Source: Trichosphaerium sp. ATCC 40318 (Eukaryota > Protista > Tubulinea). Taken from it: 64,000 nucleotides of DNA. Below, in pieces: positions 37,394-43,934 of the stretch. The notes beneath the pieces were generated by a model. It did not search any database. It worked only from the letters and a program-made list of their open reading frames with translations, and was not told where the DNA came from. Both the position numbers and the translations under genes were made by a program. The stretch is from NCBI GenBank assembly GCA_038496445.1, contig JALMLS010000376.1:496001-560000 (forward strand), in the 5' to 3' direction. Position 1 is the first letter of the stretch. Each line of letters opens with the position of its first letter.

Positions 37394-39882
37394 ATGTTGA
37401 CTCTAACACATACAAGTGCGTGTCAACCTCTTATACCAACGATACCTCTGCTGACAACTTCTCAAAAGCTTTTTTGTTGTGTTGTACAGTACTACTGCTT
37501 CCTATCGTTTCATCAACGAAAGGACGAACACCACACGCTGTATATAACAACCTACCATTTCAAGAAAATGGCGAAACTACAAAGTTCTATCTAACCGAGA
37601 AAAATGGTAAAGAAATACCCCAAGACTTTGCTGGTAGCTTCTTCTATGTTTCGGCGTGCGGAGATTTTTCAAAAGAGTATGGTCGCGGTGAACCTCTCTT
37701 TGAAGGCTATGGACGCGTCTTTCGCGTTGATTTCAACAAAGACGGCGTTGAGTTTGCTCCAGGGAGCGTTTCCGTAACCACTAAAATGCCAAGAGCGATG
37801 AGTTTTCACGCGGACAAATTGGGCGGTTTTTTTAAAGACTTTGGGATTGCAAGATTATCTCCACTACTTGGATCTGCAACAAGCCTAAGCACAGCTTTCC
37901 AAACATTTAGATTCGAAGACGACACCCGAGACCGTCTTTTACTCCTTATGGATGTAAGCAGACCAGAAGAAATAGATCCAGTTACGCTAGACCTAATTTC
38001 ACCGCTCGGACAGGCATCTGAGTGGTCTACGTCGATAATGCAGAACGACTTTCTTTTTCCTTTCATATTCGCTTCTGCCCATCCTGCAATGGATCCATTA
38101 ACAAGAAAAGACTTCTTTACAGTACAATACCCAGGTATCGAGCACGCTATATTCCCTCCTTCGATGAATGACTCCGAGTCAACCTTTTCCGCTTGCTATG
38201 CAAAGTTTATGACGCTGTTGGTTGATCTTCACGACGAATTTGATGGGTTTCCAAGCAACGTCAAGACATCAATGCAATCAATCTTCACTAACGGAAAAAC
38301 AATGGTATATCAAGCAATGCGACTAAAAAACAACGCACAGGGTACCCAACAACAGAAAGATACGCTTCTAGGCGATTATATAGAGCCTGAACACAGACAA
38401 AGATACTTGGACACCCTCGTATCGTTCCTAGACATTATCACTAGCTGTGACGAAGGCAAATCAGAAGCAAAGACAGAAAAAACGATGTTTGATATGACAG
38501 TCGACGTTCTACGCTGGAGAGGCGGGAAGAACTTGAGCAGATGGTTCGTTCACTACACTGACGAAGATGGCGTTGCGAAACCAGTAGAGATTATGCAGTC
38601 TATGCACCAGATAGGGTTAACTGAGGACTACGTTGTTCTTTGTGATACTTCGTTTAAACTCAGTTTTACTGGTATGTTCGATTCGCCTGTTCCTTGGGCT
38701 CCTCCAATAGAACGTATGATCTGGAAGACACTCGCAAAGCCACAGCTTACAGAATCAGTTTTTTATATCATTAAGAGAACTGACTTGCGTGATGATGTTG
38801 ATTATGTTGTTTCGAAGAGAGTTACTGTTCCACGTGAATCACCTCATTTTTTGGTTGATTTTAAGAATCCAAATGGAAAAATTACATTTCACGTTGCACA
38901 CAATCCAGCTACTGATCCTGCGGAATGGCTTAGAAAGTTTCAAGAGCCTGTTATGGATATAGAAGATTTTCACTCGTATGACGGTATTTTCCAAGCAAGC
39001 GGTGATATCAATATGATAGGCCGATATGTCATTGACGCTGAAACTGGAACTGTCGGTACGAAGCAATTTAAACTTTCCAAAAAAATTCTTGTTTCAAGTG
39101 CTCTTCTCTGACTCTTTTGTAGATAGCGGTGAACAAGTTTTCGGAGATGCAACTTGGTATTTAGGAGTATACAGTTGCCGTGGTTGTTTTTCTTCAGGAG
39201 ACGTTCCTCTTAAATTTGAAGACATATTTTGGGGTTCTTATGGACTTTCTGAGCTTCATACCAAAGAAGTCTTAGATCTATACAAGGACTACCCACATAG
39301 AACGTATTCTCAAGAAGAAGTAATCAAACAAGCTTCAAATTCTTCTAACCCAGCTACGCACTCTTTCTTATTCAGATCGCGTCATGCTGCTGGTGAAAAA
39401 TTTGAGATACAAGATCAATACATGTTGCCAAAAGGCTTTCTTTTAATGTCTCATCAATTCGCGCCAAAAAGAAAACCATCAAAAAGTATACCTCTTACAA
39501 GGTATGCCACATCTTAAACATTCTCTTACGTCACACAAAACCACCTTGGACCTTTCTAATGTTTTTTTTCAGAGACGGATATATCGTGAGTACTGTAGCA
39601 ACTGGTGATGGCTCACAATCCTCTGATTACCAAGTATGGATTTTTGACGCTAATAATCTAGCTCAAGGACCAGTATCTCAGTTAATCAGTAAAAATACTG
39701 ATTTGAAGATGGGTTTTACTGTTCACAGCGCTTGGTTAGATGATATTACTCAACCGAAAGATAAGAAAAAAATGAGAAGTTATATTTCGCCTCGAGAAGA
39801 CTTTTATGAGAGAATGAAGAATAGCATTAACCCTGAAGTAAGATCAATGCTTCAAAAACTTAAACCATATTTTGACGAATAG
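37394..39882 (+). CDS. Carotenoid oxygenase (RPE65/CCD family) with predicted signal peptide; 4 exons
   Basis: Four candidate Fe-ligand His motifs SAHP, SMHQIG, SPHF, FTVHSAW; DVSRPEEIDPVTL; ATG 37394 spliced gives MLTLTHTTFLLCCTVLLLPIVSS. Confidence 0.85.
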
Positions 39883-40466
39883 TTGTGATGTGGAAAATAA
39901 ATTGTAGTTTTGTAATAGTGTTTCTGTGATTAAAAGGAAACGAATCCAACGGAACACGATACCATTACATAAGTTGTTTGAACAAAAGCTACGTGCGTCG
40001 TAGGTTTCAAGCGATTTTAAAGCGCGTGTAGTTGATGAATGCGTGTGGGCTCATTCTGGAGAAGAGTATCAAAAAAGTTGAAACCAAGCCGATTTCCATT
40101 TACAAACCTGTTGTTACAAGCAACAACCGCTTTATTCGTTGCAAAAACATAGTACGTTGCAGTTAGAAGAGCTGGTAGTGTCTTTGGTGATAACTAGAAA
40201 AAAAACCACAAAAAACACCACGCACGTTTTGTTCTGATCCAATGAGACCTGCCAATAGGTGTTATGAATCCCACGTAGCCTCTTAATCCTTAATTTGTTG
40301 TGACACGCGTAGGTAGCAGTAATTGAACATAAACACTGAAAATTCAGAACCGTTGGTAGATACGTATTTACGTGTGGAATCTTCGGGCTGTGGAAATGTC
40401 TGTACGTTTTTTTTCGTTCATGGTCAACGAACGAGAGGAAACACCACCAACACACGCACTGTAGTA

Positions 40467-42677
40467 ATGGCTGAGAAAAGGAAAAGGGACATTGATGACA
40501 ATCCAGGTGGCTCTGATGAGTCAAGTGATGAAGATGATAACATGAGACTCGTGAGTTTTTGTTTTTAGTGTTGCTACTGATTTTATGAAACAACGACGTA
40601 TTTGCTCGTTTTGTACAATTACACTTTCGTTAACAAAATAAAAACCCTGGCGTTGATGAACCTTTCTAGCAAGAAGCAATACTCCAAAGAATGCTAGCAG
40701 CAACTTTTGGTAACCGTGGCGCTGCACAAAGCAATGAAAGGCTTATTACCCATCTACGTAACCAAGGAGTGTTAAAAAGTGACCAAATAGCGCAAGGTAC
40801 AGCTTCAATGATCTTGGTACAAAAAACCGGTTAACGTAACTTTTTTTTTCATAGCGCTACGAACAGTACCACGCGAACACTTTGTCACAAAGGAGTTAAA
40901 GCCTGAAGTAAATTCACCAAAACGCTAAAAAGTCGTATTTGCTTATTTTAATTCGCTGTTAGGCTTATGCAGACCACCCACTTCGCTTTTCCAAGATGGG
41001 ATTTAATATTTCGTACGCAGTGGTTTATTCCCAAGCGGTTTTTTCTTGTTTTTTTGGTTTTTAGTTTCTTGCTCTCAAGCGACTTGCTAGCGCCTTTGTT
41101 GATATACCTTTATACCTGTTAGTGCACCGCATATGTATGCCATGTGTTTAGAGAAATTAAACGTGCTACCTGGGTGTACATGCCTAGTATGTTATCGGTT
41201 CGTAGAAAACATAATTTTTATTGTTGATAGGATATTGGATGTGGTACCTCACATTTTACGACTCTATGTGCTTTTTTGGCTGGACCTGAGACAAAGGTAC
41301 ATGGAGTAGATATACACCGGCACATAATAGACTACGGGAGCCAGAATGTTGCGAAATTTTGCGAACTTTCAGGTACTAAACTCTTTCGCCATGTCGATTC
41401 GAAAACTCACTTTCAAGAAAGGGATGAAGTTTCCCAACATGAAATTCTACGTAAGAAATTGTTTCCTACCCGATCCAGATGATAATACATATGATCGTAT
41501 TCATGTTGGTGCATGTATACCAGAAAGTAAAATTCAATTTTTATTTGATAAATTAAACAAAGGAGGTATCTTAGTAGTACGTTAAAACCTGCTCTCTGTA
41601 AACAAAAATTAGTCATTGACAAGCATTAGGCGCCTTACGGGGATAAGTTGATATGTGCTATGAAAGATAAGGATGGAAAGGTAAACTCTGGGTTTTTATC
41701 ACACCTTTTCTAATATTCATTTTTCAGGTTCGTGTTCAATCGCTTATAGACGTCAGATACAGCGATTTGGTTCTTCCTTCGGAAGCTGAGATTAAAGAAG
41801 CACAACGTGAAGTAGAAAAGAGTATGTGACGATATAATCAACTATGTCATTACACTGACTTAGTCTATTCTCTTTTTCACAATCACGTGTTATTTCTTAT
41901 ATTTGTTTAGTAAAAGCTCAAAGGCTATCAGTTCCAGAAGCAGCAGTTAAAGTGCCAGAAGAGTTCAAGGCTTTGTATAATAATAAGACCAACTCAGACT
42001 TTACCTTTATTCTAAATGGAGAAAAAATATACGGCCACAAGCACGTACTACAACTTCGCTCAGAACACTTTCGGTACAGTCCAGATGATTTCTTTTTGTA
42101 CGACAATTAACCATTGCTCAGGGTTATGTTTGCCAGTGGCATGAAGGAATCACAAACAGACGAGATTGTCATAGATAGTAGATACACACGCGAAGTTTTC
42201 CTTGAAATGCTCAAGTTTATCTATACAGATGAGTGTCAACTAACAAGCAACAATTGTGTAGAACTTCTTGAATTATCTAACTACTATAAACTTGACAGAC
42301 TAAAAGCAATGTGTAAGTCTCAGTTCTTCGTTCAAAACAAATACTAAACTTAACACAAAGGTGCAATGCTACTTAAGCAGAATATTGAAATTGAAACAGC
42401 AGCATACGTACTAAGCGTAAGTTAAATACAAGAAACTCTAAAAAAACCAAAAGAGCTAACACAACGATAGATTGCAGAACGATATCAAGCTACGCAACTC
42501 AAGCTGTTTTGCACCGAATACATCTACTCGAATATCGCGGTACGCTCTTCGCTCGTATTTTTTAGTTATCTACTCACTCAGGTTGCTTAGCAAGTTGTAC
42601 AAACAAAATGGTTCAAAGAGCTCGATGATCACTTGAGAAATGACTTACTGATTAAAGCGGTTAATAGAACCTTGTAA
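40467..42677 (+). CDS. Protein-L-isoaspartate O-methyltransferase-like domain fused to C-terminal BTB/POZ(-BACK)
   Basis: VPREHF, AYADHP, ISAPHMYA, LDIGCGT, YDRIHVGA, LNKGGILVAP (PIMT); then SDFTFIL..GHKHVLQLRSEHFRVMFASGMKES...FIYTDEC (BTB), joined by in-frame splicing. Confidence 0.85.
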
Positions 42678-42837
42678 ACGCGTACTTACCATCACTTCAA
42701 GCACCTACATTTGTAAATAAACAACGATCATCACAAAATTTTTTGGTTGCGCTTGAAACCCAGTCTACAAAAACTTGTGAAGTGGAGAAAAGAAACCAGA
42801 AACCTCCTGCAATGTAATTTTTCGTTTATGTAAGCAA

Positions 42838-43934
42838 TCAAGTTGCGTGCGTAAATGTGTAGTAGTATACAGTTGCACGCATTTCTTCAGGACCTTCATC
42901 TTCTTCAAACATAGGAACCATTCTTATTGATCTAACCTTCTTTACAATAAAATTGTAAGGTTCAGCCGCTGCTAAAGAAAAAAACTTCATGTCACGATCC
43001 TGCCATTTTGGTCTGTGGTGTGAGAATGTGATAAATACCTTACGAAAGCAATTAGTGATAAACTGTTACAAAACACAAAAAAGCAAACTGAAGAAAATGT
43101 TCAACAGCCACGTAACGCAACAAGTACGTGCTGAACTGTTGCCTATTGAGCGCTACAAGCGCAAAACTGTATCTTAGATGTTATACAAACTACTTACCGT
43201 TCCATTAGGCGCTAAAAAGTTCTTAATTGATGCCAGTAGCTCCTTGTGAACGTGATGATTAAACACCAAATCAGCGCAAATAACAATGTCAAACTTATCC
43301 CTCTTTACTGGTTTTAAAAGGTCTGTTACTTTGCTGTATTCCTTTCCCCATAAGTGTCCTTGAACTTTAATGTTGTTCTTCAACGCATCTGGGATGTTAG
43401 CATCCACGTTTTTGCTTATGTTTTCCATAAGATCATCGTCTGGGTAGTCTGTGATTACAGTACAAAGAGCTTTGTTTAAGCAACAAATAAGAGAAGGCAG
43501 AGCCCCACCAGCGCCTAGTTCTACAACACTATACGCGTAAGCAATGTACCAACAGCGTTTTTAAGCAGTTTGAATAAAAAATGCTCTGAAAGTAAGAATT
43601 AACGTACGTTTTGTTCGTGAGATCGAAGGTTTCAGCGTCGAACTGATTTGTAAGGTATTTACTGGCATTCCACAACATGTGACCCCATAACTAAGTGTTG
43701 TAAACGATGAGTTAAATCAAGGCTTGTACTGGGTGACGGCCTAGCAAATGGATTTGCAGCTCACTCGGTTCTCCTTTTAGCAAAGTTAGAAGTACAAAAC
43801 ACAGATTGCATGTGGCTACCAGCTCCTGAACGTCGTTTAAATGTTTCTATGGTTGGTTCTGGATCTGGCTCATAGTATTCCTCAGGTTCCTCAAATAATC
43901 CGCCATTGTTACCAAGAGAGTCACTGTCGCTCAT
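42838..43934 (-). CDS. EFM7: Family-16 protein N-terminal/lysine methyltransferase (EFM7/NNT1-like)
   Basis: LFEEPEEYY, HPLWGHMLWNA, VELGAGGALPSL, TDYPD, GHLWG, ADLVFNH, FSHHRP, MFEEDEGP. Confidence 0.88.

What the first reader, a model, noticed from the sequence alone, without database searches (positions are those of the whole stretch)
40467..42677. PIMT-BTB fusion: candidate Cullin-3 adaptor that reads isoaspartate-damaged proteins
Seen: an L-isoaspartyl methyltransferase domain with its SAM and isoAsp motifs (ISAPHMYA, LDIGCGT, YDRIHVGA) spliced in frame to a C-terminal BTB(-BACK) domain, with an N-terminal KRKR. Established: BTB domains recruit Cullin-3; human PCMTD1 joins a PIMT-like domain to a SOCS box that binds Elongin BC/Cullin-5 and has been proposed to target isoAsp proteins. 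The N-terminal SNERLITHL and the FYVRNCF..YDRI segment look PCMTD-like. Inference: a convergent repair-or-degrade system for aged proteins using a different cullin, possibly nuclear and relevant to dormancy.
Basis: partly seen in the sequence, partly recalled or inferred. Interest (0 to 1): 0.78.

Follow-up and report, generated by a model that had tools for sequence, protein, structure and literature searches.

The report
Isoaspartate-sensor domain fused to SPOP-like BTB
One amoeba gene, confirmed by spliced transcripts, joins a PCMTD-type domain (the kind that recognises isoaspartate-damaged proteins in humans) to a SPOP-like BTB module of the kind that recruits Cullin-3. It belongs to a widespread protist family that I found described in no paper, and the family suggests that marking aged proteins for destruction is older than animals.

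Summary
Positions 40467-42677 (+) hold a 14-exon, 461-aa gene. All 13 GT..AG introns are removed exactly as modelled in single contigs that span both domains, in runs from three studies.

The N-terminal domain is a protein-isoaspartyl methyltransferase fold of the PCMTD type. In an ML tree the fusion family and animal PCMTD group together, apart from 31 canonical enzymes (100/100). The C-terminal half is most like human SPOP BTB/3-box/BACK (90 bits, TM 0.89) and keeps the Cul3-binding phi-x-E motif.

"Convergent" is not supported: the sensor domain is homologous to PCMTD, and only the cullin-recruiting module differs (BTB instead of SOCS box).

The fusion is also not unique. More than 70 protein clusters carry it, including Acanthamoeba castellanii, Physarum polycephalum, the green alga Asterochloris, and an ESM Atlas cluster that is mostly Chlorophyta. 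I found no paper describing it.

At the gate residue, which is Thr in active enzymes and His in inactive PCMTD1, the family has Asn. Catalytic status is therefore open.

Nuclear targeting and a link to dormancy have no support.

Most likely function (about 0.5, inferred): an AdoMet-dependent isoaspartate receptor of a Cullin-3 ligase.

The parts
40450..42734 (+). Transcribed span seen in spliced contigs (5' UTR from at least 40450, 3' UTR to at least 42734)
   Evidence: table 8: X1 contig covers 40450..42680 and X3 contig covers 40450..42734
40467..40550 (+). Exon 1 (aa 1-28): start codon, KRKR, acidic Ser/Asp/Glu-rich stretch
   Evidence: KRKR is not conserved in homologues.
40670..40796 (+). 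Exon 2 (aa 29-71): N-terminal helices of the PIMT fold (SNERLITHLRNQGVL...)
40855..40907 (+). Exon 3 (aa 71-88)
40963..41012 (+). Exon 4 (aa 89-105). It holds the start of pre-motif I. The gate residue Asn103 is codon 41005-41007.
   Evidence: Asn occurs in 52/53 fusion proteins, His in 23/24 PCMTD and Thr in 29/31 canonical enzymes.
41123..41186 (+). Exon 5 (aa 105-126): SAPHMYA substrate-site motif
   Evidence: Ser105 and Pro107 are invariant in all three groups.
41231..41372 (+). Exon 6 (aa 127-174). AdoMet motif I is D-I-G-C-G-T-S (41231-41251); the third Gly is Ser133 in this species only. The post-I acidic residue is Asp153.
41422..41576 (+). Exon 7 (aa 174-225): the PCMTD-type signatures F-x-x-R-N-C-F, YDRIHVGAC and GGILV
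41630..41680 (+). Exon 8 (aa 226-242)
41728..41821 (+). Exon 9 (aa 243-274): post-motif III (VRYSDLVLP) and the start of the conserved linker helix (SEAEIKEAQ)
41822..41910 (+). Intron 9 (89 nt), the intron between the methyltransferase half and the BTB half
   Evidence: junction 41821>41911 is seen in X1, X3, X4 and X2
41911..42073 (+). Exon 10 (aa 274-328): end of the linker, the BTB dimerisation helix and the first BTB strands
42122..42312 (+). Exon 11 (aa 328-392): BTB core. The phi-x-E motif Met335-Lys336-Glu337 is at 42141-42149.
   Evidence: PMC3616122 for the motif
42361..42416 (+). Exon 12 (aa 392-410): start of the 3-box/BACK helices. Ala393 stands where 49/50 family members have Glu.
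42471..42539 (+). Exon 13 (aa 411-433): BACK helices
   Evidence: (BACK_BPM_SPOP, E 0.018)
42591..42677 (+). Exon 14 (aa 434-461) and the TAA stop

Best explanation
The gene encodes a two-module protein. Its N-terminal PCMTD-type seven-beta-strand domain binds S-adenosylmethionine and, dependent on that cofactor, the L-isoaspartyl kink of spontaneously damaged proteins. Its C-terminal SPOP-like BTB/3-box/BACK module dimerises and docks on the N-terminal domain of Cullin-3. The protein would then act as the substrate receptor of a Cullin-3 RING ligase that ubiquitylates isoaspartate-bearing proteins for degradation.

This makes it a Cullin-3 counterpart, and by descent a relative, of the animal CRL5-PCMTD1/2 receptor, with the layout of SPOP: substrate-binding domain first, BTB-BACK last.

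Shown here: the gene structure, the single mRNA, the domain identities, the sister relation to PCMTD, and the conservation of the cofactor, substrate-site and Cul3-contact motifs.

Inferred: AdoMet binding, isoAsp binding, Cul3 binding, ubiquitylation, and whether methyl transfer has been lost.
For: - Gene and mRNA.
- Family: more than 70 clusters at 90% identity carry PCMT plus BTB, often with BACK_BPM_SPOP. An intronless 1737-nt ORF on a 61.5-kb eukaryotic metagenome contig encodes the same fusion, so it is not a gene-model artefact.
- PCMTD affinity by score: the P0002 domain scores 103.8 bits against human PCMTD1 (9oma), 82.2 against human PCMT1 and 73 or less against archaeal enzymes.
- PCMTD affinity by search: apart from family proteins and fragments, the two other hits in the word search were a nematode PCMTD (P0280) and a weaker canonical PCMT1-type protein (P0284; E 6e-11).
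- PCMTD affinity by tree: in the careful ML tree (80 rows), canonical enzymes separate from the rest at 100/100, PCMTD is a group at 100/100 and the fusion family at 91/89.
- Shared derived residues with PCMTD: N186, G203, I223-L224, D230.
- Cofactor positions that Pang et al. list for PCMTD1 (N86, T91, L94, E112, L113) correspond to D127, T132, F135, D153, I154. All are conserved or conservatively replaced in the family.
- The substrate-site Ser-Ala-Pro is invariant.
- BTB half: SPOP is the best solved relative, at 90.4 bits and ungapped over 159 residues, against 56 or less for KLHL/KBTBD/KEAP1. Foldseek gives TM 0.89 at 35-39% identity.
- phi-x-E: phi is L/M/Y/F in 47/50 and Glu is present in 46/50 family members; the window has M-K-E.
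- Constraint: 71 near-invariant family columns, of which the window deviates at 3.
- Human precedent: CRL5-PCMTD1 binds L-isoAsp peptides only with AdoMet bound and does not methylate (PMC12590147).
Against: - No binding or activity was tested.
- The gate residue is Asn, neither the Thr of active enzymes nor the His that blocks PCMTD1. Asn also occurs in two canonical PCMT1-type proteins (P0284 and L004). The domain may therefore still be an active methyltransferase.
- Post-motif III differs from both known classes: Asp255 stands where they have Pro. The ligand may not be identical.
- This species' copy has Ser at the third Gly of motif I and Ala at a Glu that is conserved in 49/50 family members at the start of the 3-box.
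- Even for PCMTD1, ubiquitylation has not yet been demonstrated.
- Not all BTB proteins bind Cul3.
- The presence of Cul3 in this genome was not checked, because only the window is readable.
- The structure model and the full-length Pfam scores are for the homologue P0002 (56% identical), not for the window's own protein.
Confidence: 0.5

Rival explanations
1. It is a catalytically active isoaspartyl repair methyltransferase. The BTB-BACK serves only to dimerise or oligomerise or to localise the enzyme, or to make the enzyme itself a Cul3 target. It does not deliver damaged proteins for ubiquitylation.
For: The canonical ISAPHM motif, the acidic motif-I residue (D127, where PCMTD has Asn) and the post-I acid are kept. 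The family scores higher against PCMT1 (82 bits) than PCMTD does (28-38 bits). Asn at the gate also occurs in PCMT1-type proteins of apparently ordinary architecture. SPOP-type BTB and BACK are oligomerisation modules in their own right.
Against: The domain groups with the non-catalytic PCMTD clade. The universal Thr is replaced in 52/53 family members. The Cul3-contact phi-x-E motif is kept under selection, which pure oligomerisation would not require.
Confidence: 0.2
2. It does both. It is an active methyltransferase tethered to a Cullin-3 ligase, so that one protein triages damaged substrates between repair and ubiquitylation.
For: This rests on the same conservation of catalytic-type motifs and Cul3-type motifs cited above. 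The family domain is intermediate in similarity between PCMT1 and PCMTD.
Against: There is no precedent. In PCMTD1 binding and catalysis are uncoupled (PMC12590147). The Thr-to-Asn change is unexplained under full activity.
Confidence: 0.15
3. It is a Cul3 adaptor whose methyltransferase-fold domain recognises a ligand other than L-isoaspartate, such as another carboxylate or a specific partner protein.
For: There are family-specific changes in the substrate pocket: Asn103, Arg252, Asp255 (where both other classes have Pro) and Phe102.
Against: Ser-Ala-Pro-His-Met of pre-motif I, the core of the isoAsp site, is nearly invariant. The closest characterised relatives both bind isoAsp.
Confidence: 0.1
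4. The fusion is an artefact: two neighbouring genes joined by a wrong gene model or by read-through.
For: None found.
Against: Single contigs in runs from three studies carry all 13 junctions in frame. The same architecture occurs in more than 70 clusters, including an intronless ORF.
Confidence: 0.01

Closest known systems
Human/animal PCMTD1 and PCMTD2 (CRL5 substrate receptors; PDB 9oma; PMC12590147)
   Same: The PCMTD-type methyltransferase-fold domain is the best solved relative (103.8 bits) and the sister clade in the tree. The two share N186, YDR, G203-A204, GGILV-x-P and D230, and both have lost the gate Thr. Both have two modules: a sensor followed by a cullin-recruiting module.
   Different: The C-terminal module is BTB/3-box/BACK (Cul3 type) instead of an extended SOCS box (Elongin BC/Cul5). 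The gate residue is Asn, not His. Motif I keeps Asp where PCMTD has Asn. The substrate-site motif is the canonical SAPHM rather than SAPCI.
SPOP / plant BPM (MATH-BTB Cul3 adaptors; PDB 4j8z, 3htm, 4eoz)
   Same: The BTB/3-box/BACK half is 35-39% identical with TM 0.89, aligns ungapped over 159 residues, has the phi-x-E motif, has hydrophobic residues at the dimerisation helix, and follows the same domain order (substrate binder N-terminal, BTB-BACK C-terminal).
   Different: A PCMTD-type domain replaces the MATH domain. There is no C-terminal NLS tail. The window has Ala at a Glu conserved in SPOP and in 49/50 family members.
PCMT1 / bacterial and archaeal Pcm (isoaspartyl repair methyltransferases; PDB 1i1n, 1jg1, 3lbf)
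   Same: The fold is the same (TM 0.83-0.88), as are pre-motif I ISAPHM, motif I with Asp, and the post-I acid.
   Different: The domain lies outside the canonical clade (100/100). The gate Thr is replaced by Asn. It has the PCMTD-type insertion and motifs, a C-terminal BTB, and a post-III Asp where the canonical enzymes have Pro.
Acanthamoeba castellanii Neff 'BTB/POZ domain containing protein' (P0216), Physarum polycephalum transcript (P0201), Asterochloris protein (P0224)
   Same: They have the same PCMT-BTB(-BACK) architecture and are 40-46% identical to the window protein or to P0002. They are members of the same family.
   Different: They come from other species. None carries a functional description, only automatic names. 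Physarum and several environmental members have two BTB matches or longer linkers.

Membership tests
PCMT superfamily (Pfam PF01135) | Seven-beta-strand fold with pre-motif I (S-A/Q-P), motif I (D/E-x-G-x-G-x-G) and a post-I acidic residue | tested here: met
   Exon 7 hits PCMT at 1.6e-3. The homologue P0002 hits at 1.5e-38. The model has TM 0.83-0.88 to PIMT structures. Motifs are tabulated; the window has Ser at the third Gly.
Canonical PCMT1/Pcm repair enzymes | Placement inside the canonical clade | tested here: not met
   The 31 canonical rows, including eukaryote-type ones, form one side of a 100/100 branch that excludes all fusion proteins. Animal, plant and amoebozoan PCMT1 were not in the tree; they were compared only through PDB scores.
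Canonical PCMT1/Pcm repair enzymes | Thr at the AdoMet-to-substrate channel (two residues before the Ser of SAP) | tested here: not met
   The window has Asn103. Asn occurs in 52/53 family members and Thr in 29/31 canonical rows.
PCMTD (animal PCMTD1/2) | PCMTD-type methyltransferase domain (sequence signatures and phylogenetic affinity) | tested here: met
   The fusion family is the sister group of PCMTD, not nested in it (fusion family 91/89, PCMTD 100/100).
PCMTD (animal PCMTD1/2) | His at the gate position, which blocks methyl transfer | tested here: not met
   The window and family have Asn, whereas PCMTD has His in 23/24 rows.
PCMTD (animal PCMTD1/2) | C-terminal SOCS box (BC-box plus Cul5-box) | tested here: not met
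   No SOCS_box hit was found. The C-terminal half is BTB-BACK. PF07525 occurs only in the animal proteins.
SPOP/BPM-type BTB Cul3 adaptors | [quoted passage not shown] | tested here: met
   BTB hits at 1.8e-8 on exon 11. M335-K336-E337 is present and conserved in the family. The motif definition comes from PMC3616122.
SPOP/BPM-type BTB Cul3 adaptors | 3-box/BACK helices after the BTB | tested here: met
   BACK_BPM_SPOP and BACK hits occur in homologues and weakly in window exon 13 (E 0.018). The alignment to SPOP residues 182-340 is ungapped. The model has helices at 401-456.
SPOP/BPM-type BTB Cul3 adaptors | Physical binding to the Cul3 N-terminal domain | not testable with these tools
   No complex prediction or assay is available here. 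The Cul3 of this organism is not in the window.
SPOP/BPM-type BTB Cul3 adaptors | N-terminal MATH substrate-binding domain | tested here: not met
   The N-terminal half is a PCMT fold.

The most novel reading that the evidence does not exclude
The PCMT-BTB protein represents the older, pan-eukaryotic form of an isoaspartate-degron ubiquitin ligase receptor, working through Cullin-3. Animal PCMTD1/2 would derive from the same ancestor by exchanging the BTB-BACK for a SOCS box (Cullin-5). The near-invariant Asn at the gate position would make the family AdoMet-dependent readers rather than repair enzymes. Degradation of isoaspartate-damaged proteins would then be an ancient arm of proteostasis that can be studied in amoebae and green algae.
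Probability: 0.3. Interest if true: 0.75.

Novelty: new variant of a known kind. Interest (0 to 1): 0.58.

Why it matters
Whether PCMTD proteins really couple isoaspartate recognition to ubiquitylation is still open; ubiquitylation has not been shown even for human PCMTD1 (PMC12590147).

A sister family has the same sensor domain hard-wired to a different, older cullin adaptor. It is conserved across Amoebozoa and green algae. This is independent 'Rosetta stone' evidence that the sensor's job is tied to cullin-RING ligases.

The family also offers new experimental systems (Acanthamoeba, Physarum, algae) and a natural third state of the gate residue (Asn, against Thr and His) with which to dissect binding from catalysis.

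It also gives a direction for the evolution of PCMTD1/2, as a module swap between BTB and SOCS box.

Tried and rejected
Database, Pfam and structure work used exon references and the homologue P0002 (56% identical) instead. The window's exact protein was not among the proteins retrieved.
2. The big representative search was run with exon 11 only. It served to reach full-length relatives.
3. The word search with the P0002 domain collected only 341 candidates. It returned one weak PCMT1-type hit (P0284) and no named PCMT1.
4. The genome-contig scan gave a single bacterial Pcm.
5. A first tree with only two canonical rows was unstable: the long P0284 branch attached inside the fusion family with support 13/4. 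It was discarded. A metagenome scan then supplied 30 more canonical rows and the tree became stable.
6. Thr-to-Asn as proof of lost catalysis was rejected, because Asn also occurs in canonical-type proteins.
7. The N-terminal KRKR as a conserved NLS was rejected, because it is absent in homologues.
8. Literature searches for any description of a PCMT/PIMT-BTB fusion found nothing relevant. The 2005 BTB survey does not mention it.
9. Warmack et al. 2022 (PMC9875861) is not held.
10. The upstream ORFs at 39026-39882 gave no Pfam hit.
Full report
**Gene structure**

Reading 40000-43200 and translating in three frames shows short coding blocks separated by GT..AG introns. Joining them gives 14 exons: 40467-40550, 40670-40796, 40855-40907, 40963-41012, 41123-41186, 41231-41372, 41422-41576, 41630-41680, 41728-41821, 41911-42073, 42122-42312, 42361-42416, 42471-42539 and 42591-42677. 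The 13 introns are 44-119 nt long. The open frame is 1386 nt, or 461 aa. The finding's coordinates are exactly the start and stop codons.

**Transcript evidence**

Five public runs hold 36-41% (and one 10%) of the sampled words of 40300-42800. That is the share expected for a spliced mRNA.

Laying four of the runs on the stretch shows every one of the 13 junctions at the modelled positions. Single contigs of 1406 nt (X1) and 1460 nt (X3) run from 40450 to 42680 and 42734 with all introns removed. The junction that joins the two halves, 41821>41911, is present in four runs from three studies. The domains are therefore on one mRNA.

The runs are not on record as RNA. I infer that they are cDNA from the clean removal of 13 introns.

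**Domain identity**

Single exons give weak but coherent Pfam hits: generic methyltransferase and PCMT on exons 6 and 7, BTB on exons 10 and 11, and BACK_BPM_SPOP on exon 13.

The spliced protein has no reference, so I did not type it into any tool. Instead, an exhaustive search with exon 11 led to full-length relatives. P0002 (457 aa) is 56% identical to the window protein over 454 residues. It scores PCMT 1.5e-38, BTB 1.1e-25, BACK_BPM_SPOP 4.4e-6 and BACK 1.8e-5.

**The fusion is a family, not a one-off**

Four further representatives at 50% identity have the same architecture.

A word search with P0002 lists more than 70 clusters at 90% identity that carry PF01135 plus PF00651. These include:
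- Acanthamoeba castellanii Neff, named 'BTB/POZ domain containing protein' by NCBI;
- a Physarum polycephalum transcript;
- many metatranscriptome proteins that JGI names protein-L-isoaspartate O-methyltransferase.

P0226 is a single intronless 1737-nt ORF on a 61.5-kb eukaryotic metagenome contig.

Its closest relative is the Asterochloris (green alga) protein P0224. P0224 aligns with P0226 over its whole length and matches the family's BTB-BACK profile at 8.5e-16.

The nearest ESM Atlas cluster has 62 members, is PCMT 100% and BTB 98%, and is mostly Chlorophyta. The next clusters are chordate PCMTD2 with a SOCS box.

I found no paper that describes this architecture.

**What kind of isoaspartyl-methyltransferase domain is it?**

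Scores against solved structures point to PCMTD:
- The P0002 domain matches human PCMTD1 best (9oma, 103.8 bits, almost ungapped over 215 residues).
- Human PCMT1 follows at 82.2 bits, and archaeal and bacterial enzymes score 73 or less.
- Window exon 7 alone ranks the same way.

The word search points the same way. Apart from family proteins and fragments it returned two other hits. The stronger is P0280 (Thelazia callipaeda, E 8.9e-24), which shares ten PCMTD1 words and scores 186.6 bits against PCMTD1 but only 28-38 against PCMT1. The weaker is the canonical PCMT1-type P0284 (E 6e-11).

P0280 then retrieved animal PCMTD1/2, from sponge to vertebrates, many with the SOCS box.

For canonical enzymes I used three sources:
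- P0284, a eukaryote-type PCMT1 that scores 147.9 bits against human PCMT1 and does not match PCMTD1;
- one bacterial Pcm;
- 30 diverse canonical proteins from a metagenome scan.

A first tree with only two canonical rows was unstable and was discarded.

The final careful ML tree has 34 fusion, 15 PCMTD and 31 canonical rows over 228 columns, under LG+C20+F+G4. It gives:
- canonical enzymes against the rest, 100/100;
- PCMTD as one group, 100/100;
- the fusion family as one group, 91/89 (the quick version is).

The root must lie among the universal canonical enzymes, so the fusion family and PCMTD are sister groups. They share derived residues: N186, G203, I223-L224 and D230.

The sensor is therefore homologous to PCMTD, not convergent with it. 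What differs is the cullin-recruiting module.

Limitation: animal, plant and amoebozoan PCMT1 were not in the tree. They were compared only through the PDB scores.

**Functional residues**

Pang et al. 2025 (PMC12590147) report four relevant points:
- CRL5-PCMTD1 binds L-isoaspartyl peptides only when AdoMet is bound.
- PCMTD1 does not methylate.
- A Thr-to-His change blocks the channel between AdoMet and substrate.
- Ubiquitylation has not yet been demonstrated.

At that gate position, the three groups differ:

| Group | Gate residue |
|---|---|
| Fusion family | Asn in 52/53 (window Asn103) |
| PCMTD | His in 23/24 |
| Canonical enzymes | Thr in 29/31 |

The two canonical exceptions (P0284 and L004) also have Asn. 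Asn alone therefore does not prove loss of catalysis.

Other positions:
- Ser105 and Pro107 are invariant in all three groups.
- The PCMTD1 cofactor positions correspond to D127, T132, F135, D153 and I154, all conserved or conservatively replaced.
- Post-motif III is family-specific: V-R-Y-S/G-D-L, with Asp where both other classes have Pro.

The window's own copy deviates at 3 of 71 near-invariant family columns (G133S in motif I, G147T and E393A). That is within the family's range.

**The BTB half**

An AlphaFold2 model of P0002, built with a 40-sequence family alignment, is confident (mean pLDDT 89.6). Its pTM of 0.60 leaves the relative orientation of the domains open.

Foldseek finds PIMT structures for the N-terminal half. 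For the C-terminal half it finds human SPOP BTB-BACK (4j8z, TM 0.89, 35-36% identity) and SPOP BTB/3-box (3htm, 38-39%).

By sequence, SPOP scores 90.4 bits, ungapped over SPOP residues 182-340. KBTBD2, KEAP1 and KLHL proteins score 56 or less. Window exon 11 alone also ranks SPOP first.

The phi-x-E motif is the residue pair that buries most surface in the SPOP, KLHL3 and KLHL11 complexes with Cul3 (PMC3616122). In the window it is M335-K336-E337. In the family, phi is L/M/Y/F in 47/50 and Glu is present in 46/50.

From my own knowledge, not tested here: SPOP's BTB-dimer leucines L186, L190 and L193 align with hydrophobic residues in the family.

The layout is that of SPOP, with a PCMTD-type domain in place of MATH.

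The KRKR at the N-terminus is not shared by the closest homologues, so nuclear targeting is unsupported. Nothing bears on dormancy. BTB domains in general do not all recruit Cul3; the argument here rests on the specific SPOP-type features.

**Mechanism and odds**

| Reading | Odds | Status |
|---|---|---|
| AdoMet-dependent isoaspartate receptor of a Cul3 ligase, dimeric through its BTB | about 0.5 | All binding steps inferred |
| Active repair enzyme that uses BTB-BACK only for assembly or localisation | 0.2 | Untested |
| Both activities in one protein | 0.15 | Untested |
| A different ligand | 0.1 | Untested |
| Gene-model artefact | 0.01 | Refuted |

The broader evolutionary reading is inference, at about 0.3. 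Under it, the BTB form is the ancestral one and animals swapped it for a SOCS box. It fits the presence of the BTB form in two eukaryotic supergroups and the SOCS form only in animals within my sample.

**Context from earlier notes of this scan**

Earlier notes call the organism an amoeba and report other 'X-BTB' fusions in the same genome, such as G-alpha-BTB. I did not test those claims.

Noticed in passing
window 43174-43428 (-): An exon-sized ORF just downstream on the opposite strand matches Methyltransf_16, a lysine methyltransferase of the METTL21/FAM86 type (E 4.4e-7). It is probably part of a neighbouring multi-exon gene.
   Followed up: partly
whole window; one copy in intron 9 at 41884-41889: The palindrome CACGTG occurs 44 times in the window, against 10.7 expected from shuffles (0 of 100 shuffles reach 44).
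   Followed up: partly
window 41249-41251, about 41291-41293, and 42363-42365: This species' copy carries three substitutions at positions that are otherwise near-invariant in the family: G133S (third Gly of AdoMet motif I), G147T, and E393A (start of the 3-box, Glu also in SPOP). The transcript contigs show no differing letters at these places.
   Followed up: partly
L004-L008 (rumen-type metagenome contigs) and P0284: A group of AT-rich eukaryote-type PCMT1 proteins carries an N-terminal coiled-coil-like extension of about 90 aa. Within this group the gate residue varies between Thr and Asn.
   Followed up: no
P0156, P0170, P0201 and other members of 530-650 aa: Many family members have two (Physarum: three) BTB matches, or a long linker between PCMT and BTB. 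The family therefore has architectural sub-types.
   Followed up: no
window 39026-39882 (+): Two ORFs of 163 and 107 aa upstream of the gene give no Pfam hit. They may be exons of an unrecognised neighbouring gene.
   Followed up: partly
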